Shown here piece after piece: positions 2,009 through 63,023 of a stretch of 64,000 nt of DNA. Both the position numbers and the translations under genes were made by a program. Each line of letters begins with the position of its first letter. Position 1 is the first letter of the stretch. The DNA lies in contig FLMG01003874.1 of NCBI GenBank assembly GCA_900088475.1, forward strand, positions 1 through 64,000, in the 5' to 3' direction. Source of the DNA: Hyphochytrium catenoides. Its lineage: Eukaryota; Protista; Hyphochytriomycota. The notes under the pieces are model-generated. The model did no database searches. It was not told the origin of the DNA and saw nothing but the letters and a program-made list of their open reading frames with translations.

Positions 2009-4567
2009 ATGGATGGTTGGGTTACTCGTCGACGGGACAACCTTATGTGGGTGTGGTCTGACCGCTACCTGATCCTTGACGGCAACAAGTTGCTCATGTT
2101 TAAGAGAAAGACAGATCCGACACCTCGAAGAACGATATTGCTTACACCTTCCTGCAGTGTCCCCGACATAGTCGGATCCAGCGAGAGACATTCCCACAAG
2201 CACAACGAGTTTTGGATCCTCCGCCTCCAGTTTTCAGGTAAGGTCACTTTTTCAAGAATCAAAGTGAAGTCGTGACCCCGTTCGGACGATCTTCTTTTAA
2301 AGTCTTCATCCTAGTTGTCTCTACTCACTCTCTTCAAACTTTAGGCGGAGCACTGGATGAGCGTTCCGAGAAGGAGAAGTTCATTGAGTTCGGGATTAAA
2401 ACGAAGGAAGAAGCGATAAAGTGGAAAGCTGCTATAGAGAATGCGATTCAACTCTCGATAGCCCAACGAGAGGAACGGAAGCGCAGAGCTACATCAGGCA
2501 AAGATATCGGAAATACTCCAGCCACAGTCCAGGCGCTCCTCGAAGGTGATGGCTCTGTCGATAACGAGCCATTCCTTCCTTCTTCTGACCAATCTGTGGA
2601 GAGTGAGACACGGTGGGGAATCCTGCAAGTGGAGTCGGGTTTAAGGATTCTGAAAGAATACCCTCGCGACGATGAACTCTCTGCATCGAAGATCTTTGAC
2701 AATGCCAAGATGCACAATACAGTGACTAGTACGTCAATTGCGATTGGCATCGGCATTGCTGTTGTTCTTGGAGGATTAGGCCAGAGCGTTGTTATGGTTA
2801 TTGCAGCGTTCTGCCTCATTAGCCTTTTGGCCTTGGTCTTCCAAGTTGGCGCCATCCGCTTGGACACGGTACCATCATTGAAAGTGTCAGAGGTTGTACG
2901 GGGAGATCCAGAGACCGTGTTCAAGGTTATCTTGGATAATGAGCTTTGGCGGAGGTGGGATGGGGCGGCCGCCTCACAGCGTATTTTAGAGGAGGTTGAT
3001 GATCATACAGACGTTATTCATGTAGTCCTACGACCAGTATGGATTTGGCCACTTTTCTACATGCCCAGGGGTAAGATTCTCGACTTTGTTGGCCACGTTA
3101 GTGGAAAACTTACATTTTTTCATGCAGACCTAGTCCTTACTCGTTATTGGAGAAAGGAGGAAGATGGTACCTATCTAGTTATCTACCAGAGCACTTCGCA
3201 TGCCAAGGCAGAGCCGAGTGCCCGCTATGTGCGTGCCAACTTGGCCGCAGCTGCGTTTGTCATCGCACCGCGAAAGAGAGAGAAGGCCCAGTCAAGTGAT
3301 CAGGAGTCCATGCTCACCTATGTCATCCGATACGATCCGTGCGGGTGGGGTACCTGGTGGTCCAGATTTGGAAAGGGCCTTGACTTTGTTTTGCCACATC
3401 TCAGAAATGTGTTGGGTATCAAGGATGAGTTAGCCAACACTTACTTCATTGAGCCCGTCATCTCCACCTCCGGCACCGATCAAAAGAATATGCGGACCAG
3501 CGTCGATAATAGAGGTCTGGTGCTGGGAGTCAAGAAGCTGGAGTGTTCTGCAGCGAAGAAGTTCTGGGCAGAGCCTGACGCATCCAAGTTCCACGTTCGA
3601 GGTAGGCGCGTATATCCCATTAGGAGTCTGGTCGTGCTACCGAGTTCAAGATTCTTAGGCCTTTTTCGTCTGAATCCTTTCTGTTCCGAATCCTCTGCCG
3701 CAAGACTGCCTCTACAAAGAGTGGAGTCTCTGACGCCTACCTTTTTACTTTAGGGGAATCATACCTTAAAGACAGAAAGAAGGTACCAGCTGGCCATGCA
3801 GGCTTCAACTTGGTTGCCATTGATGTTCAGTCCTTTGAAGATACGAAGGACAGGATTAATATCGCTAGCCAGCCGCACAATCTGGTCTACCAGCTGAACA
3901 GTCAAAGCAAACCTGGAGACAATGAACCTCCTTTTACATTGGTCGTCAACTTTATAGTCCCCGGCAGTGATACCCTTGCCATCTCCTGCTACTTTCAGCC
4001 GACCGACCCTGATTGGAAGGAAAATCGCCCAGCTTTCGCTGACCTCTTTTCGGATTTTATGGATGCGGATGATGAATTTAGGAACCAAAGGTATGAGCTC
4101 TCATTTAGCGTGAGAGTTCTTTCACTACCTGCCCATCTAACACGATGTCAACTAGGTTCAAGCTCATACCAAGCATTGTTGAAGGAAGCTTTATTATCAA
4201 GCAGGCTGTCGGGACCAAGCCTGCGATTATAGGAAATAAGGGCCTTACGATGCGCTACTTTAAGGGGGACAACTGGTTTGAGATTGATATTGATATAGAC
4301 TCTGACCCTGTTGCACGGAACATTACAGGTGAGCGCTTGCCTTTGCCGTGTCTCTATGTACACCTCAGTATTTGTGACGGAGTCAATCTTTCAGGGATGT
4401 GTCTGGGGGTCACGAAGTCGTTAGTTGTCGATATGGCCTTCTTGATCGAAAGTCAGACGGAGGAAGAGCTGCCTGAGACTATTATTGGCGCGGCACGTTT
4501 CAACAGAATCGACCTCAAACAGTTTCGCAGAATTCCCAAGTCTATGAACTACACTGCTAGCTCGTAG
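2009..4567 (+). CDS. EDR2-like lipid-transfer protein (PH + START + DUF1336/EDR2_C), about 6 coding exons
   Basis: PH start 'MDGWVTRR..WSDRYLILDG'; START motifs 'RWD..ILEEVDDHTDVIH..PRDLVLTRYWRKEEDGTY'; DUF1336 motifs 'WAEPDASKFHVRG', 'FRNQRFKLIPSIVEG', 'DMAFLIESQTEEELPE'. Introns about 2238-2344, 3071-3127, 3602-3752, 4091-4156, 4329-4394. Upstream exons (e.g. 1905-1940) may extend the 5' end. Confidence 0.9.
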
Positions 4568-18017: not shown

Positions 18018-20241
18018 ATGTGGAACACAATCTGTAGCATCCGGCGCTCCTGTTGTGGCTGGATTGGGCGTCACAAGGCCCTGGTTGCAGTCAGTGCGGT
18101 CGCCGGAGTAGGACTTGCCGCCTACTGGGGAGTCAAAAAGGTAGTCAACGAAGCAGAGAGGATGACGATGGAGCTTCAACAGCAGTTTCTGGACCAGCAG
18201 AGGTTGAAAATGCCTTCTATCCTATCTATCGATGATTCCATCTAACTCTCAAACTGTACTCTGCGAAGACGATGATCCCCGTTTCTTCTATCCTGTGCAC
18301 TCTCGCTGAACCCGTTCTTCTCGCTATCTAACAGTTTGGGCTACCGCGATAACTCTGTCCTATCCATGCCTTCCTCTCTGCGTGCCCCGTTGCCGCTTGC
18401 TTCGATCCCTAAGGAAGATTGTTCAACTTGCTTGACAGCTATCCTCATTGTGCAGCTTCACAAATACTTAGACGCCCACTCTCTGTTTCCTCTCTGTCCG
18501 GGATGATGCTAATCCAATCATCCTTGTCTCAATCATAGCCCGTTCCCACTCTGATCTTTCTCACTCATAGGCTCAACCTCCACGTCACAAGGACTCGAGA
18601 AGAGTGCCTAAAGACGGTTATCAGATTTCTTCCTCTCCTCAGGAGCCGAATATTCCATCTTGTGGACGTGGACACACCCGTAAAGGAACTGCGAGGACTT
18701 AAGCGTCCAGACAGCAAAGAGCGGCAGTTTAAACTCTGGGAGGACATCAAAGTTCTGAGTATGCATATCTATTTTTTTAGCTTGGGGCTGCTTTCAGTAT
18801 TGTCTTGGTCACGTAGGACGCATTTTCTTCCTCCATGTCGGACCCTCTCGGTAGCGCCTTGGCTGTTTGTCTAGGTTCAATTTCACTTCGAGTCTTTAAG
18901 CGCCTGATCTGCCATGAACCATAGAAGTAACATAGCTCCGCTGCCAACAACGACTCTCTCGTTGGGCTTGCATTTGTCTAACTAGGCTTCACGCGGCTCT
19001 TTGTCAGTGTCTACGCGCTGACTCTTCTAAACCTGCTCTTATACGTGGAGATCCACATTTTGGGCAGATATTCCTACCAGGAAGCACGCATTAAGGCTAT
19101 GGACAAGGTAGACGCCTCAGCGAACCTTGTATTATGCTCCTGCTTCATCTTGTACTTTGACCCTTGTCAATCTCTCCCACTAATTTGACGAATGTTCTCA
19201 ATCTTCTAACCCAACTTCTCCCTCTTCTAGACTTCCCCGCAGAACCGGTTTGCGTCCTTGGCCCCAGAGTGTGAGCCACTTTCTACAGAAGCGCGACATA
19301 AGTTCCTCTCAAGCAGTGTAGAATACTTCTTAGGAGAAGGACTAGAGAATTTAGTAAAGCACATTAAGAAGCATGTTGAGGAGGCAAGCAAAGAGTAAGT
19401 GTGCCTCTAATAGGTGCTTGCGTTTACTGGTGGAACCTTCTTGGTGCTGCTTATGGCTGACTGACCCCTTTTGGATGTTAGCAATCTCATCAATTGTCCT
19501 TGGCTCCAGGTGGCGAGTGGAAACGAAGAGAGAAGTAGCACCTAAAGATTTGAAGCAGCTCTTGGATGCGATACGGAAAACAATAGAGTTCAGCGAGGAA
19601 AACACGGACATTCATCCTCTCCAGAGATTTATAATCTATATCCTTTCCACTCTAATTTTGCTCTTCCATCTCCCATTCATCACCTCAACCAAAGTAGGCG
19701 TCGTCACCGTATCCTTAACTCCCGTTGGCAGTACGTCCGAAGTCCGAAGGCGATGACAAGAGTTTGGAGAACCTTATGGAGCAAGCTTGGGGCGTTATCA
19801 AAAGGTACAGACGTACACTTTCTTCCGCGTTCTTGTAAGCCTAACCCAATATTTTGTCTCCTCGCATTCAGCCCCATGTTCCATCAAATACTCAGAGACA
19901 GTGATGACGCGGCCTTTGATGCCGCTTGGGCAGACCTGGTACATGTTGTCTACCCCAGCGATGTGACAGCATTCTCAAAAGATGAAGAGGAGAGAAAAGA
20001 AGGGTCCTCGTCGTCACCACCTTCGTCTGTCAGTCCGCGCAAGTACCTGGAGTCTCCAGTACACACCAACGATTACCCTGTCTTCGCCAAGGTTATCCCA
20101 CAGGTTAAACAGCTTGTCCCCCGAGTCCTGGGCGGACAAGATGATGAGCCCGCCAACAAATTCGTTAGACTCTACCACCATCTCAGCAGTGTTAACCTCT
20201 TCTGTGGTGGCATATTCACAGGAATGACGGCAGAGCAATAA
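18018..20241 (+). CDS. PEX3: Peroxisomal biogenesis factor 3 (peroxin-3), 7 exons, one intron apparently U12 AT-AC
   Basis: N-terminal basic segment plus TM 'GRHKALVAVSAVAGVGLAAYWG'; 'KLWEDIKVLS/FTRLFVSVYALTLLNLLLYVEIHILGRY'; 'LMEQAWGVIKSPMF'; 'PVFAKVIPQV'. Confidence 0.92.
19638..19734 (+). other. U12-type (minor spliceosome) AT-AC intron, 97 nt, in PEX3
   Basis: Donor ATATCCTTT at 19638, branch point TCCTTAAC at 19712-19719, AC at 19733-19734; removal restores the PEX3 frame. Confidence 0.85.
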
Positions 20242-20450: not shown

Positions 20451-23107
20451 CTAAAGCCATATTCTTGCTGCTTTATCTGTCTGATTAAAGAGAACCTGGT
20501 CGCACCGAAGAAGCAGCTCCAGCGTATCAATAGCTCGACTGATCCCGTGTCGCCTGACAGAGATCCGTTTAGTTTAACTGATCTGCCACAAGCTATATGA
20601 GCGACCTAGAAGGCTCACTTACCAGGAGAGCTCAGTATCCAGTGTATTCGGACAGAATAGCCGGGAAGACTTATCCTCGTCATCTGCTGCATCACCAAAC
20701 AGGTAATCCAAAGGAGAAATGGCTTCTTTCGTTGCCTCCTGAATAGAAGACCAAACTTCATCTGTCAGGAGCTCTAGAGCGAATTCCTCGCTTTGAGCTT
20801 TGCTGACAGGGTATATTGCTCGTGGTTCCATACCAGAAGACGCAAGAAGTCTGTCAAGTTCTTGTCTCTCCACACCTACGTTCACGGCTAGAGTACACAT
20901 TAGTTCTCGGAACGCCCCAGCCACTTCCTGCAGGACTCTGCCAGCCCTGAACTGGAGAAAGTGGGTTGTCGCTACCCTGTCCAATACTTTAGCGCAGGTC
21001 GCCTCCACCTTCCCGGCACCAGGAAGAACTCTCAGATCCTTGAAAGCTCTTTCTAGCCGGAGTAGGTAACGTCGGAGACGTCGTTCTTGGCGGCAAAAGA
21101 GCACTGGTGTCGGGGCAAAAAGAAGGATTGTGATGGGTAGTGGCTTTTTTGTCTCTTCTTCGTCAACACCAAAAGAAGATGATATCGCTCTGTCCTCCTC
21201 AGCATCGAAGACAAGGTAGAAGTCTGAGGCTACATGACTCCGTACATGAGCTCCGGTAGTCCATCGTTCCTCTTCCAGACTTCCCGCATGGATGACACTT
21301 AGCTGGGCGCCACGACCCAACAGCTTGTCGGTGACGTATTCCAGGTCTTCCACTATACACGTTCCTGTTACGTTGGCCACCTGCACCAAGACAACAGTGA
21401 GACAAGGTGAGGTGTGAGGTCTCAAGAATTCCCAAGACTCGTACTCACAGAGGAATTTAAAACAGCGCCAAAGGTGAAGGAAAATATGGCATTGATGAAG
21501 AGCTATTAACCTCCATAGAGGAAAATGACTTCCAGGGAGTGAGAGACTGCATACCGTCCTCATACTTGAAAGGTTAATAGAGCCTAGGCTAACTATCCCA
21601 AGCTCCATAAGATGGCCCTGCAGGGGTGAAGGGATAGTCCCGGTGCAAAGGATCAAATCTATCTTCAGCTTTGAGACCATTTGAGCTAAGACTCTGATGG
21701 CATGGAGGTCGGGATTAGGAGCGCTAGTAACCACAGGGCCATCAATTATAGCAACTCGGCGACAATAGCAAGAAAGGCCAGGCCGTGGAGGGGTCGACAT
21801 CGTGCTCTGCGCAGGTTCTTCACTTTTCCTGGGACCGCTTGTGCACAACTCCTGAGTCTTAAGTGCGGACTTCATGGCGTCTCTTACCGCGGCGAACTCT
21901 GTCCGGTCTAGCGGCAGGACAATACCACGCAATAGGCGATGGGAACGGCACTTCATATCTTCTACTTCCCAGTCCGCATGCTGAGGACCCTGTAAGCCCA
22001 TGATAGAGATAAGAGAAGAGTGGAAGTGCTGCACTTGGGTCAGTCCTCTCGTCGATATAAAGAAGCCCTCCATCGCAACCCTGAAGAGGAAACCCATGGA
22101 CGGGCGGCTCTGGTGTTCCTGTTGGATACTAAGTGAACTCTAGTTAGAACAAAGCTGGCCAATCACAAATTGGTAAAGAGTAGTTAGGGTGCTAAACTCA
22201 CATTGCCTTGCCTACATGCTGCAAGCCGAACCCCAGCCACGCGAACTGTTCCAAGAGACGCTCGTAGGCGTCGGTAGCTTGGAGCCGGTCAGCATCTCGT
22301 TTATTCGGCTGGTGGTCTCTAGTGTCATCCTGGTGGTGTAAGGGCGTTTCCTCCACGGCGTTCCCCTGGGAAGTGGCCGTTGCAGTGTGCTCATCAAAGA
22401 ACCAAGCGCACTCCTCATCGTCCTCAAACTGATCGGCCTGCAGACTCTCTGTGGTGCTATCAGGCGTCACTGCGGCATGCTTTATCTCTCCCTTATCCTG
22501 AGCTTTTGGCGAGAGGGCTGGTACAGGTATTGTCAACTCAAGGCACACTCTATGACAAATTGCCTCAGAGAGACGTAGTCCTTGAATAATAACATGTCTG
22601 GAGGCCGAAGGGCAGTCAGCGTCGTGGAGAGAGCTCCAAGTTTAAGCACTGATTAGTGACCTGGGATAGCCCTCCTCAAGAAGAGCGAACGCCGCTCGGC
22701 TCAGTAGTCCAATCAGAACTGCCAGAGTAGTCGTGCCCTATACAAAGCTAGATTCTAAAAAGGTGCAATGCGCAACGAGGATAGGAAAGAGTTATACCGT
22801 GCCAATACTGTCTTCGTAGGCCTGGAGAGTCTCTAGTACGATGTCCTTAGCGAGAGAAGGGGTCCGCAGGTGGCTGATAATCTCAAGAGCGTCAGAAGAC
22901 CAGATCCAGTCGTTTTCGTCACCTAGGTAACAAGTGAGCACAGAGGCTCTGGCGGGACAGGTGAAGTGAATGTCTAAACCAGCAGGTCGTACCATTTATA
23001 AACTTAGCAGAGTCCGCTGGTCCTCTGAGACTTTGCACAGACCGCCCGAGAATTTCTGCTGCTCTTAGTACCTGCCGAGTCGAGACGCCGTCGACAGCTA
23101 CGTTCAT
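20451..23107 (-). CDS. BBS12: Chaperonin-like Bardet-Biedl syndrome protein, BBS12-like, multi-exon
   Basis: 'LGRSVQSLRGPADSAKFI', 'LETLQAYEDSIGT/GTTTLAVLIG', 'DLILCTG', 'RVLPGAGKVEATC', last exon 'RHGISRAIDTLELLLRCDQVL'; this is a divergent TCP-1/cpn60 fold with a BBS12-like N-terminus. Confidence 0.72.
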
Positions 23108-24036: not shown

Positions 24037-25098
24037 ATGGTACCAACGGCCTATTCACCTTCGGCGCCTTGCCTTGGAACTCCCCCCGTATCTCAGGCCA
24101 CCTCAGCCCTACAGAGCGGTGAACAACATCCGATTCCGCTGTCCGCTCAACCTGCTGTGAACAGCTACTATCATCGTTATGCTGATGATACATATGTTCC
24201 GTGGCGTGACCGCTCACCGTCGTCCTGTGGATGGTACTGGCGAATCATTCTGCCAACAGAAGCTTCTCAACCGTTAGCACTGCAAAAGATCAAGACTGTT
24301 GCCTCGTCGTTCGCTCCGGCATACTCTCTCTTAGGGATGAGGTGTCTCCTTTTCTGGAGATTAGCAGTGATGCTTTACTTTACTGTCATTGGGATCCTCT
24401 GGTCGTGGTCAATTTACTGGACGGATGGACCCATCTACCCGCCAGTCTACCTAACCAATTGGGGGGCCGTTGTCACGGCATTGTACTGGGGTCTGGCACT
24501 TGCAAACTCAGTGCATAGCAAATATTCCCTGTCAGTAGCTCAATGGCAGTATGATCCTCACGCTCCTGAAGGACCGAACACGTGGTGGTGGCTTTGCGTT
24601 CTTCAGATCTTTCTCTTTGAATTGAGCTTGGTGCTTGAGACCCTCATTACGGTCCTTTACTGGGCCTTCGAAAGCTCTGACTCATGTACTCTCGACTGCA
24701 TTACAGTCCACGGCCTTGGATTGGCGTTTCTCCTCATCGAGCTGTTCGTTTCTCGGACGCCATTCCGGCCCCGCCATGTAATTCTCACAGTGATCTACCC
24801 TATTCTCTGGGTGGCTTCTCAGGCTGTCTGGGTCCATACAGATCATGTTGCAGCGTACAAGAGTCTTTCGATGCGGGACGGCATGAGTGCTCTAAAGGTT
24901 ATTGGTGGACTGGTGGCATTCGTGATCGTCCACTTCCTCTATGTGCCAGTTGTTAGGGTTCGAGACCATTTCTGCTGCGGGCGGTTCTATATAGCGGATG
25001 ACATCAAAGACTTACAGCAGAAGGGCGAGGAAGACTCAAGAGGACCAAGAGAAGACTCTGAACTGGCAACTCAGACGTTTGATGCTGGTGCTGTTTAG
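24037..25098 (+). CDS. FAR-17a/AIG1 / rolling-stone-like multipass membrane protein, single exon
   Basis: 353-aa ORF with about 6-7 TM segments; 'YLTNWG', 'ITVLYWAF', 'TVHGLG', 'IELFVSRTPFRPRHV'. Confidence 0.75.
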   Translation: MVPTAYSPSAPCLGTPPVSQATSALQSGEQHPIPLSAQPAVNSYYHRYADDTYVPWRDRSPSSCGWYWRIILPTEASQPLALQKIKTVASSFAPAYSLLGMRCLLFWRLAVMLYFTVIGILWSWSIYWTDGPIYPPVYLTNWGAVVTALYWGLALANSVHSKYSLSVAQWQYDPHAPEGPNTWWWLCVLQIFLFELSLVLETLITVLYWAFESSDSCTLDCITVHGLGLAFLLIELFVSRTPFRPRHVILTVIYPILWVASQAVWVHTDHVAAYKSLSMRDGMSALKVIGGLVAFVIVHFLYVPVVRVRDHFCCGRFYIADDIKDLQQKGEEDSRGPREDSELATQTFDAGAV

Positions 25099-38196: not shown

Positions 38197-41100
38197 ATGC
38201 CGCCTCAGAATGAGACTCAGGATGAAGCCCGCGCGGCTGCGGCTGTGCAAATGGCAGCCAAGCGTCTTGTGCGGAGAGGAACCAACTCCTCGGAACTCTC
38301 GTTTGGTAACAGAGCTTCTCTGGTCAATCTGCTCTTCCCAACAACACCTGTTCGGGCAGCTAGCAACGCGCCTGAACCACTGTCTTTTGGACTTTCGCCA
38401 GGAAAGAGCATTTTTTTCAACCGAGTGGCTGATCCTGCTGGCATCTATGAGTCCCCAGAAGTGTTTGCCCAATCTCCTCCAAAGCCAAAATTCACCGAAG
38501 CAGTACCCGCTGAGCAGAAGCTTGCCAATGCGATCACAGCTAGCGCCCATGTAGCTTATAAACTGAGCGACATCCTCTTTTTATATCCAGCAGCGGCACC
38601 GGAATTTGGCGATGAAGCCTTAGGCTGGCAGGAGGAGGGTATTCCTAACGCCTTTGGCTATCCCGGAAAGGTTACTAAAATGCATAGCCGCAATGGCGCT
38701 GCGGGGACTGTGCATGGTGCCCTCCTGACGGGCGAGCACGCTTCTGTCCTGTGCTCTGGACAGTCACTGCCGCTCATGATTCCCTCCATGTACCGGATTG
38801 CCAGGTCCAGAATTCCGACGGTCTTTCACGTTGCAGCCGAGAGTACGGAGGACGATTTATCTCTCATTAACTCTCACGATGACGTGATGGCAGTTCGCCA
38901 CGCTGGCTTCGCCATGCTCTCCTCGTCGACGCCACAAGAGAGCCATGACCTTTCAGTCATCGCACACATTGCATCTCTCCAGCAAAGTTCTCCTTTCCTA
39001 CATTTCTTTGACGGGAAAACTGCTTCCAAGGAGCTCTCTGCTGTAAAGCTTCTCTCCACAGAGACACTGAAGAACATTGCCCAATCTGAAGGGGTACAAC
39101 GCCACCGCAACAGGCTAGAGACCGGAAACGCTTCTTCTTCAAGCGCAACTTCGTTCCGCGATGCGGCGCTTGTTCATGACTTGGTATCTTTGATGAACTC
39201 TCTAACAAATGTTCTTGGTAAAGAGTACCAGCCGTTTGAGTATCATGGGGCAGCAGATGCTGAGGCCGTGGTGGTGGTAATGGGAACTGCGGGCGCCGTA
39301 CTTCACGAGGTGATTGATCATCTCCGCCTTGGAAGGAGAAAATTCGGTTTACTCAAGGTCAGACTGTTTAGGCCCTGGTCTGCGGAGCACTTCCTGAAAG
39401 CCTTGCCTTCCACTGTGCGGCGCATTGCCGTACTCGATCGTTGTGGGGAGTATGCTGGGGAAGCTGACCCTCTGTATATGGACGTCCAGTCCTCCATCTC
39501 CTCGGCGGATTGGTTTGGCAAGGCACCTCAAGTGGTTGGTGGTCGCTATGGCACTACAAGCGCGGGGTTTACGGCTGAGATGGCCGCGGCTGTCTTCTCC
39601 TACCTCGAAGGCGAAGTTATTGCTCATTCCTTTGCAGTGGGCTTCGAAGATCCTCTGGGCGTTCACCTCTCCATTCCCGTTCCCAAGAAGCTAAAGCTAA
39701 ACGCTCTCTCTAGACACATTGTGCTCTGGGACGAGGTACCGGGCGCCTCTAAGAACAGTGTGCTTGAGCATCAGGACCTCGTCATGCACCTTCATGAGCA
39801 CGATGACCTCAGTGTGCAGGGTACTTTTAGCTTGGATAGTAGGAAGGCCTTGGTGGCCAGCAGGAGCAATCTATCCTTTTATGTGAAGGGAAAGCAGCCC
39901 AGCTTCGTTCCAGACGCGGTATACGGAGACCTGGTGGCCTGCGCGTCGGAGTCTTTGCTTGGACTATTCGATGTTACTGCTAACCTTAAAAATGGAGGTA
40001 TTTTTCTCCTAAACAGCTCTGGGGAAGGCGAACTGGAAGATCGGTTCTCCTCCTCTCTCAAGTTCCAGTTGGCCACTATGCAGGCGCGTGTACTGGTTCT
40101 GGATGCGCAAAAGGTGGCTGATGAGTTTGGCTTGAGCGTATCCCGAGTCATGCAGCTTGCAGCCATCTCTCTTTTGGATCTTGTAGAGGAGTCAGTGCTA
40201 AACGGGCTCATCAGCACTGCAACTCCGGAGTCAGTCCTGCAGCACATTGAAGGCGCACTCATGCCCGTTCTCTACTCTTCAAAATGGGTGTTACGTGAGG
40301 NNNNNNNNNNNNNNNNNNNNNNNNNNNNNNNNNNNNNNNNNNNNNNNNNNNNNNNNNNNNNNNNNNNNNNNNNNNNNNNNNNNNNNNNNNNNNTTCAAGT
40401 CCACCATCTCTTATCTTATTGGAGCTCCCGCCCACTCTGAGGCGAAGACTGCTCGGCGAGCGTTGCCCCACGAAGCTATCCTGCCAAAGCTGTTCCCAGC
40501 TGCTTATGGTGCAAAGGATGGATTTCGTCACAGTGCTACAGCCATTCTTACAGTCACGAAGTGGCAGCGCCTTACTCCTCTAGATTACGACCGCAACGTC
40601 TTCCATATCGAATTTGATACCACAGGCACTGGACTAACCTATAAAATTGGAGAGGCACTTGCTGTGTATGGCCACAATGACGAGAGAGAAGTTGATAGAT
40701 TCCTTGAGTTCTATGGCTTGGCCGCTGACGACGTGGTAACCATGCCAAGAGGAAACAAGCAAAAGAAGGAAGAGCCACTGCCCGGAGAGTCAGAGACGAT
40801 TCGACATGAAGTTGTAAGCGTTGGGCAGCTCTTTACCCAGGTCTTGGACATCTTTGGCCGCCCACCTAAGAAGTTCTATGAGGGTCTTGCAGACCATGCA
40901 ACGGATGAGAAAGAGAAGGAGAAGCTCAACCACATCGTGTCTCCTGAGGGCAAGGAGGAGTTGCAAAGGAGAATCGAGGAGACCATCACGTACGCTGACC
41001 TTTTGAGAGAGTTCCGTTCGGCAAGGCCCTCTTTGGAAGAACTCATCCGTTTAATCAGCCCCATCAAGCCGCGTCACTACTCTATCGCATCTTCAATGAA

Positions 41101-41722
41101 GATGAACCCAAATAGCGTGCACCTCTTGATTGTGGTGCATGACTGGAAGACGCCATCGGGGGCATACAAGATCGGCCAATGCACTCGATACCTAAGCAGT
41201 CTGCGGGAGGGAGCCAAGGTCTCTGTTGCTGTCTGTTCTTCCGTCATGAAGCTACCGAAGGACCACAAGGATCCTATCATCATGGCTGGTTTGGGTACAG
41301 GTATGGCACCGTTCCGCGCCTTCATCCAAGAGCGAGCATATTGGAAGGCGCAGGGAGAAGAGGTTGGTCCGATCTCTCTTTACTTCGGCTCTCGGTACAA
41401 GTCCAAGGAGTTCCTCTATGGAGACGAGATGGAGGCGTATCATCGTGAGGGGCTTCTTACCAACCTGCGCACTGCCTTCTCGCGTGACCAGAAGGAGAAG
41501 ATTTACATCCAACACCGGATGAATGAGGATGAAGAGCAGCTGGGCGAATATATGACCCAGAGGAATGGTCACTTCTATCTCTGTGGCCCCACCTGGCCAG
41601 CAAGTGATGTAAAGGACGCAATGGTCCGTGCTCTGGTGGCTGGGGGCATGGTGGAGAAGGAGGCAGGCGGACATATTGAGGATCTCAAGAACATTGGCCG
41701 TTATGTTCTGGAGGTTTATTAG
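38197..41722 (+). CDS. MET10: Sulfite reductase [NADPH] flavoprotein subunit, fungal Met10-type (PFOR-like N-terminal domains + FAD/NADPH-binding reductase); spans N-gap 40301-40393
   Basis: PFOR-like motifs 'GAAGTVHGAL', 'LMIPSMYRIA', 'PFLHFFDG', 'FEYHGAADAE', 'KVRLFRPWS'; reductase motifs 'RLTPLDYDRNVFHIEFD', 'PRHYSIASS', 'MAGLGTGMAPFRAF', 'AFSRDQ..KIYIQ', 'YLCGP', C-terminus 'GRYVLEVY*'. Confidence 0.85.
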
Positions 41723-45810: not shown

Positions 45811-48800
45811 CTAAGTAGTGCAAGACATAGCTTGCCTCTTTTACTCGGACTTACATCTTGACCACCGAAGCTATCAGGTCATAAAGGCATCATATGGCTA
45901 TCTCACCACAGAAGGGCCCCATGCAGGATTAGTTGCCTTACAAGGATGCCAGTACGAGGGGAGAAGTCGCACTCCATTAGACCAAGCAAGGTCCTTTCCT
46001 AAGGCAGATAACTTTCTTCGCCACTAGCGCACAGCGCTGCCGCCTGTGACTAGTCTCAGTCCTCTCTCTCTCCTCCGTCAGGCACTATCTGCTTCGCTCT
46101 GGATTTGAGCCCCTAACACGCCTCACAGGCAGCAGATGGCCATCATCTGCAGTGTCACCGTGGAACAGCAAGCGTAGGTGGATGACACGTCTTATAATAA
46201 TATAGGGGTGATGGTGGAGGTCAAGGTAACGAAGAAGGCCAGTGAGTTGTCAAGGAGGTGAGCCTCCTCCTCCAGAAAGCTTGCTGAGTTTGAAAAAAAT
46301 TTTGACGTTTGAGTTATCTCAATGACGACAACATTGATGGGTTTATAGAATAATCTCTATAAGTTATCTACCCTTCAAAAGCTTGTGAGTTTGTTGGGTA
46401 ATTGAGTTTGACTTTCAGCACCGATCAGAATCTCTGATCAGGATCTCTACTGTCATCGTTCTTCTCTTCTTCGGTTCATGACAGATGCTCTCTTGCTGCT
46501 CCGCCGTCAGTGGTCGATGCCGCACAACAGTGATCATCCTCCTCTTCTTTCGTCTTTCGGAGACCCATCATTCGGTCGACGCGACAGCTTGGCAGCAATC
46601 TCAGTCGCTGTTCGATGCCCGTTATAAGGGTGGTCCCGTCATTAGGACTATGTCTGCTCGGCCTAACTTTGCTTTGGGTACTTGGAACCAACAATGAGAC
46701 CTACGAGAAGACACACCTCGTCACAGAGTCCCTCATGGGACCAACCTCATAACGATGACTGAGCAAGAAAGAACGAGCGATGATTGGGGTTAACGACTTC
46801 AAATGTCGTTGCAGCTCATACCACAGAAGAGCTTTGGGATTGTTCTTGATGATATAACCAAGGGAATCTCCTAGAAAGCGACGACTAGTCCACTGTCGGA
46901 AAAATTGGCCACCCGCATAACTTGGTAAGACCGCTTCTCGTAGAGAGCTAGGACCTTAGAGAAGTTCGTCGGCGCGGGTTCTCCTCCCTTGTGACGAGAG
47001 ACATGAGTCCTTTACAATTAAAGTAACTTCTCCAGTTGCCATTCGCAGACCTCGAAGATCGATTGGCCAGTTAGTTTGACCGTAAGGGATAAAGAAGTAG
47101 TGGAGATGATTGATGCTACAAAACCACCAGCGCAGGAGGAGTAGAAGCCTGAGAAGATGAGGAAGAGTCCGACGAGGTCGAACGAAGAGAAAGTAGTCTT
47201 CTCAAAGGAGGCATCCGTCTCCCAAACACGTCAAAGATGGAAGGAACTAGCAATCGAAGATCTAAGTCAAAGGACGTGGGTCCATAACCTGTCAGCGAAG
47301 TGGNNNNNNNNNNNNNNNNNNNNNNNNNNNNNNNNNNNNNNNNNNNNNNNNNNNNNNNNNNNNNNNNCCTTCCAGAGCAGAGAACGAAGGAGTATAATAG
47401 TAGGGAAAATCAAGCACTAAAGAATGTATAAAGAAGAACTGTGCTATCAATAAGTGGCTGCTGATCAACAGTGGCTCTTGACGATAAGTGACTCTTGAAC
47501 TCATAAAGTTGATTGACATATAGGCAGCAGCGACGTAAGTGCAAAGCTAAACCTAAGGCCAACAGATGCAGCCGCCGCCACAACTGCTGTGCCGGGCGAA
47601 GGCGCGATGACCAGGGGATGGCTGTCTGGAGCCTGCTACTATTGAGGAGTGCATTGCACTACCTTCTCATCAGTACACTATGCCCACGTGGCTACTACTA
47701 CTAGGGATTGTCTACTTATTATCGCCAGGTCTTGACTTCCATCATAATTAGGTCAGCTGCTCTAATGTAGCGCAGGAGAACAAGTGCAATGCCATCCGTC
47801 GCTTTTTCTTTGCTTAGTCAGAGCGATCGTTTTGGCTTTGCAGAGTGTCAGAACAAAGGGCCTAGCGTTTAATCCAGCTCAAGATGGCCTCGTTTGCTTC
47901 GGAAGAGAGTAGCCATGTTGCATATTAGCAGGAGGGAGGCGGCTAATGGTGCTCTGGCTTTCGTCCTACATTATTCTAATCTCCTTGTGGCGTAAGCACA
48001 GGCATTTTAATGGAATGGGATGGTGATTTCATCTGCAGGGTAACTATGAATGGTGCTAGTGTTGTGAACGGTGCTAGTGTCTCTGCATTCCGCACCTCTT
48101 GGTGCGTTCGTTTCCAAGTCCCAACTGGACCCTTACGTCAGGGCCACGAATTAGACGGTAAAGTAGCTCAGAAGCCATCATAGCCAGCCGATAGCCAAAG
48201 GAGGGAGAGTTGAGAATGGGAACTAAGGAGCTCTTGACTGCTCCTCCCCAAGCTTCGCTCCCATCACCAAGGAGGAGGATGGCTTCAGGTAACAAGCTCG
48301 CAGGTCACACCACAACGGCGCCATCACACGAGGATCTCGTCCTCCTAATAGAAGGACCCTAGACAACAATCGCCTTGTGGAGCTTCATGAAGGCGGCAAC
48401 TACGTGGCCGCATCACATTGAGGCGCAGGCGGCGCTGGCAGCATCAGCATGCAGACAAAAAGAGAAGAAGGAGAAGGAGAGAGGAGGGAAGAGATGTTCA
48501 CTTGAAGAAACGAGTTTGTTCCCTATCAGCTCAGCCGGCATCTCTTGGCCCGGAATCTCCATATTACTACTCATCCTGTTGGAACCGAATATGACTAAGA
48601 TTAGAGTATGTGGAGTGAAAGTATTTTTTCTCTCTGTCTTTGGAAAGAAGCAAGCAGATACATGACCCATCACTGACAGGGCAAAGACAGAGGAGGTGCA
48701 GAGATATAGGTCAGGGAGTGTAGCATACACAGACAGAAGAGGTTTTGGCCTATTTAATCCCATAATAAGAATCGACCTAGAGAGAACTGGAGATGTATAT

Positions 48801-53099: not shown

Positions 53100-54668
53100 T
53101 ATCGCCGGACGATGCGCACTTCTTTCCCGGACACTCAACCTTAGCCTCTTGCAGGAGGGGAGCGTTAGTGCGGTCCTGCTCCTCCGGTAAGCAGCCTTGC
53201 GAAGAAAGCGGAAAGCCAGTGTATCTGACTTGCACGAAGTAGTTGGCAGGCTCAAGATCTCACACTCACCGCCTTAAGTAGTTCGGCGAAGGATTGTCTT
53301 TATTAGAGAGATGGCAAAAGGTGAAATGACCCTCTGGTGAACCTGTAGAGGTGCTTAACTAATCAACCTTTAGGACTAACAGGTCCAAAGACGATAAGAT
53401 CGGGGAACCGGCCCTCTTCAACTCGGTTCTCAGAGCTTATAAAGGTTAAGAAAAGCGCTATCCCGCTTTGTTGATTGAGAAGAGAGAAAGATTGACTGCA
53501 GGAAGGGAGAAAGCCAGACACGAACGGTCAATCTTTACTCCAACAGAGAGCAGCGCAGAGAGACTCATGACGAGTACAAGGTACCTCACCTCGCTGATCC
53601 CAAGCTTCTCCTCCTTTCTGCTCTCCTTTCTCTCCCTCTATCCCTTGTCACGTCATGGGAGTCTGTCAGGTGATGAGGTTCGGTGCTTGACTTGATGGCG
53701 ACATCCGCTCCATGACCTCTCAGATTAGACCGATGGAGACGGACAATCGACAGCGCTATGCACAGGAGCTGACAGCGTAGAGGGAAGGAAGGTGGAACAT
53801 CAAAGAAGCAGCAGAAGACACAACAGTGTCAGAGATATTGGAGCCCCCATACAGAGCGGGACTATGGTAGCTATATCCTATGTCAAGGGTATCCGAGAGA
53901 TGCGAAATCCGGGAGACAGAGCGGGGAATAGACATGACAGAAGGAAGGACGAAGACATCAGAACGCCATCAGACTGAACATGTTTCGCACCTCAAAATGC
54001 TTGTACTTGCACAAACACGCGGGACGAAATGCATGGCTTTATAGGTAGGACGGCGTACAACACGTACGCTCAGTTGACAGGAATTATGACTCCTCACCTC
54101 CTTCTCCTCTCGTCAGACTCGCAATAAGTTAATGACGAGAAATATCGATAATCAGTGGTTGGTTACTACCGAGCTGTCGGTTACAAGCATCCTCAAGTTC
54201 GGCAAATGCACTCGGCTTGAGAGGCAGCAAAGGGCTGGCTCCTCCTCCTCCTCCCTGTCCTGTAGGCTCACCAGCGAAGAGGTACGCTTGGCTGGAGTTC
54301 CCTTGACTAAGGAAGGAAGCGGTACACATAGGATGAGTAGATTGATTAGGGAACTGCTCTTTCAAGCTCTCGGTAATCGGCGCAACAATGGAAGAGGATG
54401 TGTAGAACCTTGCGATGTTGTCATTAGTAAGGCAGTCTCTCAACCAGGAGTAAGCAGCACCAAGAGAGGAAGCATCTAGAGGAGTTTCAAGGCGAAGACT
54501 TTGTAGATGGGCCCAAGGCAGCGAGTGACGTGCTGATGATAGAAATATTTCACTTGTAAGCTCGACTATTTGCAGCGATCTCTGCTATTGCCTAGGCTGT
54601 GAATGACATNNNNNNNNNNNNNNNNNNNNNNNNNNNNNNNNNNNNNNGTATAGAAGAGTCCTGGCTTA

Positions 54669-57027
54669 TTGGATGCGGCACCAATAGGTGAAGATCCCCC
54701 GTTCTGCTTAAGGATGGGTTCTGGCGTGTCTCTCTTTCGACATGGCAAAGTCACGCCAAGCCCAACACAGAGGGAGCGAAGGGTAAGGAGACAATCTGTC
54801 CAATCTCTAGGTGGCCTGCATCCAGATGGAGGGCGACGGTCGATGTCTGTTAACAAGCGGGCAGCTCAAAGAAGATCTTCAACGACCTGGAAGGCCCCTC
54901 CTAACATCACGAAAATAAGGAGGGAGAGTAATGCCTTCCAGTCAGATCCTCTGTTGCTGGAGCTTCGGCTCTGTCTAGATGATCCCATGGGCCAGAAGCA
55001 TCTTGGAAACTTTGCGAAGAAGATAGGGAAGGGTTCGACGGAAGCCCTATTCTGCTGGGTGGACATTCAGGAGTACAGATCTATCCCAAAGAGTGACTAT
55101 CGCCGGCATTTTGCTGTCTATATCTTCGAAAAGTATGTGAAGGATAATGCCAAGATGAAGGTCCAGAGTGTTACACCGGAGCTGATCAAGGAAGTGAAGG
55201 TTAGTGAAGACAAAATTGGTAGTTTATGCAAGCTGCATCTAAGAACACGTATTTCTCTGTCGCGCAACTATATACAGGATAAAATAGAAGCGGCTAAAGA
55301 AGATCCCAAGAGCTTAGAGGACTCACTTTTCGAGAATGTACAACTCAACTGTCTCACTGAGATCAAAAGGACCACTTATATGGAGTTCAAGGCGTCGGAA
55401 GACTATGACAAGTATCAGAAAGAGATGAAAGATACTTATAACAAGGTGGTTGTTGATGACTTCGAGTACATGGATATCCTTGGCTTGGGCGGCTACGCCC
55501 GTGTCTTCCATGTCAGAAAGATCAGCACTGGTAGACACTACGGTAAGAGATTCCTCGATTGAGAGTTGCTCATTCTGCTCATGACTCTGATATCAAATGT
55601 TTTAGCCATGAAAGTTCAGCTCAAGAGCAAGATAGTTGAGGAGAACATCAACTATCCAGAGAACATGGTCTCAGAAAGAAAGCTGCTTGCCATGTGCCAC
55701 CACCCTTATCTCATAGATCTCTTTTACGCGTTCCAAACGGACAAATATATCATCATGGTCTTAGAACTCATGCAAGCTGGAGATTTGGCCGGTGAGGTCA
55801 GCCAAGAGGTAGAACGGACTCTCTATGGACTCAGCGAAGAGAGGACTCAGCTTTACATAGCGGAGATAGCAATGGTACTGAGCCACCTCCACAATATGGG
55901 CATTATTTACCGGGATTTGAAGCCCTGCAACGTTCTTCTAGGCGGGGATGGCCACATAAAGCTAGCTGATATGGGTTTTGCGAAGCGGACCACAGCCATT
56001 AGTGAAGAGATATATGACCCTTGGTCATACCCTAATATCCCCTCCTCTTCCAAAAAGCTTTTGGTGATGGAAACGAAACCTCGGAGCTCGATTGCCTCAT
56101 TAGTGCCACAAATGCCATCAGACGGCAGCGGACCAACTCTTGAAGGGCCATCGCAACCAAGGGATTCTATAACAGGAGAAAATGCTAACGAAGGCGCTAA
56201 CAACTTAGGTGCTACCGGTCAGGTCTCTCCTGGCACTTCTACCACTCCGACAACACCCAAACCCTTAGTACGTGCCAAAAGCACCGTAGGGACCCGCGGC
56301 TACCTGGCGCCGGAGATTATCAAAGGGCGTCTGCACTCTCGCTCAAAAAGAAAGCCCTATACTGAGGCCGTAGATTTCTGGGCACTCGGAGTTTCTTGCT
56401 ACGAGCTGCTCACTGGAACAATGCCCTTTCATAACCTGGAAATCAGTCAGGTCTTCGATGCTCAGGATGGCAAGGGCAAGAATAACCTGAAAGATGCAGT
56501 AAATCATGCTATAAAACAAATGAGCCAAGAGATCCAGTTTCCGGCGAATATCTCTCCCACTGCGCAGGATTTTATACGATGTCTCCTCCACGTTGATCCG
56601 GAGAAGAGGTTGGGCTTTGATGGTATCAGGAAGCACCCCTTTATGGCAAACTTAGACTGGGACAAGCTGGCGATGCGCCATGTGGTAGCCACGACAAAGC
56701 CTAGAGTGAAGAACCTTCCAGAGAAGCCAAAATACAGCTCCTTCCAGGCTGCAATGTCTGCCTTTGACTCCATTGATAAAAAAATTGGTAAGGCTTTCTG
56801 TGTGTAAGAGTATATAAGAACTGAGAACTATCACTTAGCTGACTTCTCATCCTATATTAGACTGGAACGCTGAATTCAACCCTGAACATCAGCACTACTT
56901 CCTGGAGTGGGACTTTGTTTCGCCGCAAACCCTAAAGATTGAGCTTGGCATAGCGGTACAGCTGGACGCTTCGAATGTGCCATACAAGATCTGTCAGTTA
57001 ACAGGGGAGACTCCTATCGATGACTAG
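54669..57027 (+). CDS. GRK-like kinase: RGS-homology domain + AGC Ser/Thr kinase; true start is at or upstream of the N-gap
   Basis: RGS 'LDDPMGQKHLGNFA..EALFCWVDIQEY..IFEKYV'; kinase 'LGLGGYARV', 'AMK', 'YRDLKPCNVLL', 'KLADMG', 'VGTRGYLAPE', 'DFWALG'; AGC tail 'FLEWDFVSP'. Confidence 0.88.
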
Positions 57028-61614: not shown

Positions 61615-63023
61615 CTTCGTATTGAGGCTGCGCGGCAGATAACCAAGACTAAAACCTGTGGATGTTGCCGACCAAGATGGGGTTAGATATAGGTTTGTCC
61701 AGACTCTTCTCAAGCTAGCTACCTACGGGAAAGCGATCTTGGGCAGATGCTACAGCAAGCAACTGAGAAACAAGCAACCAATCCCCCTCCAAAGTGCAGA
61801 CAATGTCTTTGAGTACCTTCCAAGTCAGTCACGAAGGGAAGATATCGATAAAGTGGTAGACGTCAGTCCGTCCTCGTGCCGATAAGGTGCCGCTCGACAG
61901 TTATTGCGTGTTTCTCCGATAAACAACTTTCGAGGGAGCTCATTTCGGGAGTGCTCGGAAATTTTTGTTCATAGCATGAAAGAAGGGAAATGTCGCCAAC
62001 TGGTCTCCTCTGTTTCTGTACTCTGGCGCGGGACATCGCCTCTTTCTTTCCCTTGGTCCTCTGTCGAAAATCCGAGCAAAGTTCTTAGCCAAACCATTTC
62101 ACGCCGAAACCGGACTTGCTTGGTATATGAAAGACCTTGCGAGCCCACAAACCTTGATTAAAAACTCCGGAATGACTTGTAGCACAATATGAGACTGATG
62201 CTACTCAATCAAGGATCGGGCGGCGTCAATCGAGAATAATAGCTCAAACCCAACGAGATGACAAATGGCTCTGGAAGTCAAGGAGGGGAATAGGTACGGG
62301 GGACCAGCCAAGTTCATCCTGCTGAAAGTAGTGCAGGCACCAAACAAGACCGTTCCTTTCCCGGCAAATATTTAGGTTGGGTTTGGCAGACCCCGAAGGA
62401 TCCACCATTCCCGGCTCTCCTGTCAGGGAAGAGCGTTAGTTTCCTTACTCATTAGTTTGAGGCCAATCTGACAGTGAGGCATGGTACCCTCAATATAACT
62501 AAGGCACAGATCCCACAAGTTTGCCTTATTCTCCAAGAACGGTACAGTGTGCAGCAGTGTCTGCTTCAGGAACAACGGCCAAAATAGCTCTATATATTCA
62601 GTATAGCGATATACCGGTAACCCCTAACATACTACTGTAGTATGAATAGGACAATCTTTGAATGGCAACAACTACAAATGGTTTGCAGCTCATCGAACGA
62701 CAAGTGAAAGTTGAGATCTCCCAAGATCCACCTGATGACAGCAGTCTCACACAAGAACCAAGACCACAAACAACATCATAGCGTGAACTCGACAAAGAAG
62801 AAAGCTTGCTGATGTCCAGATGAGCTCTCCTGCGGCCCTAGCCCACACAAAGGAGACGACGCGCCAGGGCTTAGTAGAAGTAGTCATAGGAGCTGTCACA
62901 GGGACAACAAAATATATCGCGGCAATTGGGGCACAATCTAGGGACTGCTAATACCTTGTGCTAAGGATGGCTTCTTATACCTCTGGATTCTATCTGCTCT
63001 AGCAGCAATTAGAGTTCCTGGCA

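What the first reader, a model, noticed from the sequence alone, without database searches (positions are those of the whole stretch)
19638..19734. U12-type AT-AC minor intron in PEX3, implying a minor spliceosome in this lineage
Seen in sequence: exon ..CAG AGA TTT ATA ATC T|ATATCCTTTCC.. is a perfect U12 donor. TCCTTAAC at 19712-19719 is a perfect U12 branch point, and ..CAGTAC|GT CCG AAG follows about 15 nt later. Splicing gives LQRFIICPKSEGDDKSLENLMEQAWGVIK/SPMF, which fits the Pex3 'L..E..D.L.SP.F' helix. The other introns I resolved in this window are GT-AG. The branch point sits within GTATCCTTAAC, so it overlaps a second perfect GT-type U12 donor. An in-frame AG (19730-19731) lies 3 nt before the AC. 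Established: minor splicing is patchily distributed; it is known from oomycetes and reported lost in diatoms. Inference: this organism retains U11/U12/U4atac/U6atac, which may be unreported for its lineage, and gene predictors would mis-model this exon.
Basis: partly seen in the sequence, partly recalled or inferred. Interest (0 to 1): 0.8.

Follow-up and report, generated by a model that had tools for sequence, protein, structure and literature searches.

The report
Minor-spliceosome AT-AC intron in PEX3
The fifth intron of this protist's PEX3 (peroxisome-membrane biogenesis) gene is very probably a real "minor spliceosome" (U12-type) AT-AC intron, and a U12 snRNA gene lies in the same window; this is an expected find in a relative of oomycetes, where minor splicing is already known.

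Summary
Window 19638-19734 starts with ATATCCTTT. It carries TCCTTAAC 15 nt before a terminal AC. Removing it joins two reading frames into a 408-codon PEX3 model whose other five introns are GT-AG.

Three new lines of support:
- A Logan contig from a related species (L001) holds the whole orthologous gene. All six intron positions and phases are the same. Its intron 5 is again ATATCCTTT...TTTAACTCC...TAC (95 nt), although the intron interiors are no more alike than shuffled sequence.
- The 97 nt are pyrimidine-rich like the other introns.
- Rfam finds a full-length U12 snRNA gene at 62297-62465 (-), with the branch-site-pairing GUAAGGAA, an Sm-like site and the CUACUUU loop.

No RNA run was listed, so the junction is not shown by reads. 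Whether AC or the CAG 3 nt upstream is used stays open.

The scan has noted at least seven other AT-AC introns and an RNPC3 gene elsewhere in this genome. Other agents take the genome for Hyphochytrium catenoides; I did not verify that.

No paper in the library links Hyphochytrium with U12 splicing, but oomycetes and Blastocystis are known to have it. This is a new member of a known kind, of low to moderate interest.

The parts
18018..20241 (+). PEX3 (peroxin-3) gene model of 7 exons: 18018-18202, 18571-18758, 18986-19107, 19231-19394, 19510-19637, 19735-19804, 19872-20241 (stop included). This gives 408 codons.
   Evidence: Exons 2 and 3 hit Pfam Peroxin-3 PF04882 at collinear profile positions 53-97 and 172-204 (E 2.4e-4 and 4.1e-5). 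Exon 2 weakly matches human PEX3 chains 3ajb/3mk4 (E 0.12). Exon lengths sum to a multiple of 3. All seven exons have counterparts in L001 except the short exon 6, which was placed by hand.
19510..19637 (+). Exon 5 (128 nt), ending in phase 1 with ...ATA ATC T.
   Evidence: The orthologous exon in L001 (3106-3233) is also exactly 128 nt and ends in phase 1.
19638..19734 (+). Intron 5, a U12-type AT-AC intron of 97 nt in phase 1.
19638..19646 (+). U12-type 5' splice site ATATCCTTT.
   Evidence: It is identical over 9 nt in L001 at 3234-3242.
19712..19719 (+). U12-type branch site TCCTTAAC, with the branch adenosine at 19717 or 19718, 16-17 nt from the 3' end of the intron.
   Evidence: The best duplex of the window's own U12 nt 15-30 within this intron falls on 19708-19722. 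L001 has CCTTTAAC 13 nt before its AC.
19733..19734 (+). Terminal AC of the intron. A CAG ends 3 nt upstream at 19731 and is an in-frame alternative.
19735..19804 (+). Exon 6 (70 nt). Its first two bases, GT, complete the Cys codon T|GT.
62297..62465 (-). U12 minor-spliceosomal snRNA gene. It has 5' GCCUCAAACUAAUGAGUAAGGAAA (branch-site pairing), the Sm-like AAAUAUUUG, and a 3' stem-loop with a CUACUUU loop. TATAT lies about 30 nt upstream.
   Evidence: Rfam RF00007 scores 55.9 bits (gathering 53), E 3.4e-8 for the window, model 1-151 of 151. Sequence, fold.

Best explanation
Window 19638-19734 is the fifth intron of a PEX3 gene and is removed by the minor (U11/U12-dependent) spliceosome as an AT-AC intron. 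Inferred mechanism, from the established U12 pathway: U11 pairs with the 5' site ATATCCTTT. The U12 snRNA encoded 42.6 kb away in this window pairs through GUAAGGAA with UCCUUAAC and bulges the branch adenosine. The U11/U12 di-snRNP defines the 97-nt intron, then U4atac/U6atac.U5 enters. The 3' site is chosen by its short distance (16-17 nt) from the branch. Exon 5 (...ATC T) is joined to exon 6 (GT CCG...), making a Cys codon and the sequence ...LQRFIICPKSEGDD.... Shown here: the signals, the frame, intron-like composition, conservation of the position and signals in a related species, and a U12 snRNA gene. Inferred, not shown: that the junction is made in RNA, and that the other minor snRNAs exist.
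For: - Perfect 5' site, perfect branch site and a terminal AC 15 nt after the branch box.
- This combination is expected 0.02 times per 64 kb.
- Only with this intron removed do the exons sum to 408 codons with five ordinary GT-AG introns.
- The 97 nt are 67% pyrimidine, like the other introns (58-67%) and unlike the exons (37-54%).
- The orthologue L001 (amino-acid identity with the window: exon 1 62%, exon 2 66%, exon 3 81%, exon 4 68%, exon 7 41%) has the same six intron phases.
- L001 also has an exon 5 of exactly 128 nt and an intron 5 of 95 nt. That intron begins ATATCCTTT and ends CCTTTAACTCC-N9-TAC.
- The L001 model is in frame (1188 nt) and stop-free.
- The interiors of the two introns are no more alike than shuffles: 253 of 300 shuffles align at least as well. 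So only the splicing signals are conserved.
- A U12 snRNA gene with intact functional motifs lies in the same window.
- Leads from the scan, not tested here: other AT-AC introns, one said to be RNA-confirmed, and an RNPC3 gene in the same genome.
Against: - No RNA evidence: no RNA run was listed for this stretch, so read laying could not be used.
- An in-frame CAG lies 3 nt before the AC, so the exact 3' site is uncertain.
- Only one orthologue was found. In that orthologue an ordinary GT-AG pair (3227-3330) would also keep the frame.
- Exons 5 to 7 have no Pfam match, so the protein alignment with distant PEX3 could not arbitrate.
- U11, U4atac and U6atac were not seen; only this window can be searched.
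- The duplex energy between U12 and the branch site does not discriminate: intron 1 reaches a similar value.
Confidence: 0.87

Rival explanations
1. It is a U12-type intron, but the 3' site used is the CAG ending at 19731 (an AT-AG intron, 19638-19731). This gives ...RFII-LR-PKSEG..., one residue longer.
For: The CAG is in frame and 13-14 nt from the branch adenosine, within the preferred distance. AT-AG U12 introns are known as a rare class (general knowledge of the family).
Against: In U12 introns a 5' terminal A normally goes with a 3' terminal C (general knowledge). In L001 the AC is the 3' end that keeps the frame with the ATATCC donor, and the CAG there lies after the AC and would shift the frame. 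With AC, the two species' exon 5 and junction region have equal length.
Confidence: 0.08
2. The frame is restored by an ordinary U2-type GT-AG intron, 19694-19742 or a neighbouring pair. The U12-like motifs are then chance, and the protein carries about 19 extra hydrophobic residues (YILSTLILLFHLPFITSTK).
For: Such frame-preserving GT-AG pairs exist. The donor AAA|GTAGGC is no worse than other donors of this gene.
Against: Every such acceptor is purine-rich coding-like sequence (GTCCGAAG, GATGACAAG) with no pyrimidine tract, unlike the five real acceptors. The added residues are not conserved: the read-through in L001 is similar only where the U12 motifs lie. The stretch has intron-like composition. 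The chance expectation of the motif pair is 0.02.
Confidence: 0.03
3. There is no intron: a frameshifted pseudogene or an assembly error in a draft scaffold.
For: The window is a scaffolded draft with runs of N.
Against: An independent assembly of a related species has the same break at the same codon phase with the same signals. All exons are stop-free and the total is in frame.
Confidence: 0.02

Closest known systems
U12-type AT-AC introns of oomycetes (Phytophthora, Saprolegnia), and the many AT-AC introns of Blastocystis
   Same: The 5' site and branch-site consensus are the same, the branch-to-3'-site distance is short, and the termini are AT-AC. These are stramenopile hosts that keep minor snRNAs (PMC2396436; PMC10639083; PMC11347168).
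   Different: The host is probably a hyphochytrid (per other agents' notes), for which the library holds no report of minor splicing. No paper in the library pairs PEX3 with U12-type or minor intron. Whether oomycete PEX3 has an intron at this position could not be checked.
U12 snRNA, Rfam RF00007
   Same: The match is full length and above the gathering score. The 5' region is GCCUNAAACUNAUGAGUAAGGAAA, there is an Sm-like site, and the 3' stem-loop has a CUACUUU loop.
   Different: The middle stem-loop carries a 28-nt insertion relative to the model. The score is only 2.9 bits above threshold. The Sm site reads AAAUAUUUG instead of AAUUUUUG. Expression was not shown.
Ochrophytes (diatoms, brown algae), where minor splicing was lost
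   Same: They belong to the same supergroup, the stramenopiles.
   Different: No minor snRNAs or introns were found in them (PMC2396436; PMC10639083). This genome keeps at least U12 and this intron, so in this respect it sides with oomycetes.

Membership tests
U12-type (minor) spliceosomal intron | 5' splice site [A/G]TATCCTT at intron positions 1-8 | tested here: met
   ATATCCTTT at 19638-19646.
U12-type (minor) spliceosomal intron | Branch site close to TCCTTAAC, about 10-20 nt from the 3' splice site, with no long pyrimidine tract in between | tested here: met
   TCCTTAAC at 19712-19719. The intron ends 15 nt later, and the spacer is TCCCGTTGGCAGTAC.
U12-type (minor) spliceosomal intron | Removal gives an intact, conserved coding sequence | tested here: met
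   A 408-codon model. Same position, phase and exon-5 length in orthologue L001.
U12-type (minor) spliceosomal intron | Splicing signals conserved in orthologous introns while the intron body drifts | tested here: met
   The first 9 nt are identical and TTAACTCC is shared. The interiors are no better than shuffles. Only one orthologue was available.
U12-type (minor) spliceosomal intron | Junction observed in RNA and dependent on U11/U12/U4atac/U6atac | not testable with these tools
   No RNA run was listed, so read laying could not be run.
U12-type (minor) spliceosomal intron | The genome encodes the minor snRNAs | tested here: inconclusive
   U12 was found in the window. The relaxed Rfam scan of the window shows no U11, U4atac or U6atac, but 64 kb says nothing about the rest of the genome.
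U12 snRNA (RF00007) | Covariance-model score at or above Rfam's gathering score, full length | tested here: met
   55.9 bits against 53, model 1-151 of 151.
U12 snRNA (RF00007) | Branch-site-pairing sequence, Sm site, and a 3' stem-loop whose loop binds the 65K protein | tested here: met
   GUAAGGAAA, AAAUAUUUG, and CUACUUU in the loop of the terminal hairpin. That the loop binds 65K comes from general knowledge.
Peroxin-3 (Pfam PF04882) | Match to the family profile above the curated cut-off | tested here: inconclusive
Exon by exon: 20.8 and 23.3 bits on collinear parts of the profile, each below the 27.6-bit cut-off for a whole protein. There is a weak match to human PEX3 chains. Exons 1 and 4-7 have no hit.

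The most novel reading that the evidence does not exclude
In the related species (L001) the same intron can be removed in frame in two ways. One is as AT-AC (3234-3328, U12-type). The other is as GT-AG (3227-3330), with a GTGAAC donor like that gene's intron 1 and a good pyrimidine tract plus CAG. The intron might therefore be a living intermediate of U12-to-U2 conversion, or a switch between the two spliceosomes that yields isoforms differing by three residues. The window's copy has no such GT donor and would be the unconverted state.
Probability: 0.15. Interest if true: 0.5.

Novelty: new member of a known kind. Interest (0 to 1): 0.25.

Why it matters
It adds a gene (PEX3) and, if the genome is Hyphochytrium catenoides as other agents of the scan concluded, a lineage (hyphochytrids) to the map of minor splicing in stramenopiles. 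That map is patchy: minor splicing is kept in oomycetes and Blastocystis and lost in ochrophytes. The U12 snRNA gene gives a direct handle for expression tests. Gene predictors restricted to GT-AG will mis-model this exon pair, so annotations of this genome need a U12-aware step. None of this overturns current views, because retention in the sister group of oomycetes is the expected state.

Tried and rejected
- RNA evidence: the look-up of sequencing runs (kind rna) listed no run, so read laying could not be used.
- More orthologues: phmmer of exon 7 against 1.84 billion representatives gave one protein only. A profile search added nothing. Two metagenome scans, with exon 7 and exon 2 profiles, found no relative.
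- Organism identity: products of three window ORFs are not on record. A Met10-like ORF has its best hits in early-diverging fungi at about 55%. A membrane-protein ORF has seven hits, with a moss the only named one. An ESM Atlas look-up of exon 7 was uninformative. I could therefore not confirm the lineage myself.
- Other ATATCCTT sites. 55474 (+) lies in the coding exon for the glycine loop of a kinase, next to an ordinary GT-AG intron. 37361 (-) has a TCCTTGAC 297 nt downstream but no coding context. 60880 (+) and 52017 (-) have no well-placed branch site. All four are rejected as chance.
- The second donor GTATCCTTAAC as a functional element: rejected, because it is not conserved in L001 and no branch site follows it within the gene.
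- U12-to-branch-site duplex energy as a discriminator: rejected, since intron 1 scores as well.

Full report
**The observation.**
- Exon 5 ends ...CAG AGA TTT ATA ATC T at 19637.
- The next bases are ATATCCTTTCC.
- TCCTTAAC is at 19712-19719.
- The stretch ends ...GGCAGTAC at 19734 and is followed by GT CCG AAG.
- GTATCCTT at 19709 overlaps the branch box.
- An AG at 19730-19731 is in frame.

Each motif alone is not enriched in the window: RTATCCTT has 6 hits against 3.2 expected, and TCCTTAAC has 3 against 1.8. The ordered combination of donor, TCCTTAAC within 30-400 nt, and AC or AG 6-16 nt later occurs once. It is expected 0.02 times per simulated 64-kb window.

**The gene.** Three-frame translation and the splice signals give seven exons:

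| Exon | Coordinates |
|---|---|
| 1 | 18018-18202 |
| 2 | 18571-18758 |
| 3 | 18986-19107 |
| 4 | 19231-19394 |
| 5 | 19510-19637 |
| 6 | 19735-19804 |
| 7 | 19872-20241 |

- The model has 408 codons. Introns 1-4 and 6 are GT-AG, 67 to 368 nt long.
- Exons 2 and 3 match Pfam Peroxin-3 at collinear profile positions (E 2.4e-4 and 4.1e-5). Each is below the whole-protein cut-off.
- Exon 2 also weakly matches human PEX3 chains 3ajb and 3mk4.
- The C-terminal exons have no family match.
- The joined protein was neither searched nor folded.

**Composition.** The 97 nt are 67% pyrimidine. The five GT-AG introns are 58-67% pyrimidine and the exons 37-54%. So the stretch looks like an intron, not like coding sequence.

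**Comparative evidence.**
- phmmer of exon 7 against 1.84 billion representatives found a single protein, P0121. It is encoded on a 3891-nt Logan contig of run SRR32051687, fetched as L001.
- tblastn of the window's exons places the whole orthologous gene on L001. Identities are 62, 66, 81, 68, 27 and 41% for exons 1-5 and 7.
- Reading the DNA and locating the junctions gives a 396-codon, stop-free model. It has the same six intron phases.
- Exons 1, 2 and 5 have exactly the same lengths as in the window: 185, 188 and 128 nt.
- L001's intron 5 (3234-3328, 95 nt) begins ATATCCTTT and ends GTCCCTTTAACTCCTTATCTTTAC.
- The first nine bases are identical in the two species, and TTAACTCC and the terminal TAC are shared.
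- The interiors align no better than shuffled sequence: 253 of 300 shuffles score at least as well.

That is the conservation pattern of splicing signals, not of a coding insert or of neutral DNA.

**A caveat on L001.** In L001 a GT-AG pair (3227-3330: GTGAAC...CTTATCTTTACAG) would also keep the frame, removing three more codons. So in that species either spliceosome, or both, could act. The window has no GT near its donor.

**Rival splicing models in the window.** Every frame-preserving GT/GC-AG pair has the same three weaknesses:
- It uses a purine-rich acceptor inside what looks like exon 6.
The longer candidates (up to 103 nt) reach acceptors well inside exon 6 and delete part of it.
- It adds at least 19 residues that have no counterpart in L001.

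The AT-AG variant (19638-19731) cannot be excluded. It is still U12-type and changes Cys to Leu-Arg.

**The machinery.** An Rfam gathering-threshold scan of the window finds one RNA: U12 snRNA at 62297-62465 (-). It scores 55.9 bits against 53, with E 3.4e-8, over the full-length model.

The alignment and fold show four features:
- the 5' GCCUCAAACUAAUGAGUAAGGAAA with the branch-site-pairing box;
- an Sm-like AAAUAUUUG;
- a long 3' hairpin whose loop reads CUACUUU;
- a TATAT about 30 nt upstream.

Within intron 5, the best duplex of this RNA's nt 15-30 falls on 19708-19722 with one A unpaired. The energy itself does not discriminate between introns.

A relaxed Rfam scan shows no other minor snRNA in these 64 kb. 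That says nothing about the rest of the genome.

**What the scan noted before (leads, not tested by me).**
- Twenty-eight notes in this genome mention AT-AC or U12 introns.
- Follow-ups accepted introns in ICMT (said to be RNA-confirmed), RRP46, an Afi1/SPA-like gene and an LRR gene.
- An RNPC3 gene is noted.
- Several agents take the genome for Hyphochytrium catenoides, one from identity to HcKCR1/2.

My own attempts to place the organism failed. The gene's intron sizes are compatible with the published H. catenoides statistics (3.64 introns per gene, mean intron 208 bp; PMC5795050).

**Literature.**
- Minor snRNAs and introns are known in oomycetes and were not found in diatoms or brown algae (PMC2396436).
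- A survey of over 3000 genomes confirms Phytophthora and Saprolegnia, reports hundreds of mostly AT-AC minor introns in Blastocystis, and finds none in Ochrophyta (PMC10639083).
- U11, U12 and U6atac were again found in Gyrista (PMC11347168).
- No paper in the library holds Hyphochytrium with U12 or minor spliceosome, nor PEX3 with U12-type or minor intron.
- The H. catenoides genome paper does not discuss minor splicing.

**Verdict.** This is a genuine U12-type AT-AC intron (confidence about 0.87 for the stated borders, about 0.95 for U12-type with either 3' site). It sits in a PEX3 gene, in a genome that encodes U12 snRNA. It is a new member of a known kind, expected from phylogeny and already seen repeatedly in this genome by the scan. 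Interest is low to moderate.

Noticed in passing
window 62297-62465 (-): A U12 minor-spliceosomal snRNA gene, above Rfam's gathering score, with TATAT about 30 nt upstream.
   Followed up: yes
L001 3227-3330 versus 3234-3328: In the orthologous PEX3 intron of the related species, an ordinary GT-AG pair and the AT-AC pair overlap and both keep the frame, differing by three codons. This could be a U12-to-U2 conversion intermediate or a dual-spliceosome site.
   Followed up: partly
window 55474-55481 (+); intron about 55545-55605: This ATATCCTT lies inside the coding exon for the glycine-rich loop of a kinase. The gene joins an RGS domain (ORF 54669-55562) to a protein kinase (ORF 55566-56807), a GRK-like architecture. 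Its intron here is an ordinary GT-AG that contains the in-frame stop.
   Followed up: partly
window 40301-40393, 47304-47367, 54610-54647: Runs of N (scaffold gaps). The first lies between the PFOR-like ORF (38197-40440) and the FAD/NADPH reductase ORF (40247-41722), so the 'apparently intronless' Met10-type fusion noted on this window spans an assembly gap.
   Followed up: no
window 40247-41719 (+): The sulfite-reductase flavoprotein (Met10-like) part has its best hits in early-diverging fungi (Acaulospora, Entomortierella, Coemansia, Obelidium) at 54-56% identity. It is a fungal-type gene in what is said to be a stramenopile.
   Followed up: no
window 24037-25095 (+): A 353-aa multi-pass membrane protein ORF with no Pfam family and only seven database relatives (46-51% identity). 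The only named one is from the moss Ceratodon purpureus.
   Followed up: no
window 20619-22097 (-): A 492-aa ORF with a weak Cpn60/TCP-1 chaperonin match. It is convergent with PEX3, with stop codons about 380 nt apart. It may be a divergent CCT-like or BBS-type chaperonin.
   Followed up: no
window 37361 (-) to about 37040: ATATCCTTT followed 297 nt later by TCCTTGAC and a CAG, but with no reading frame on that strand. This is probably a chance match.
   Followed up: partly
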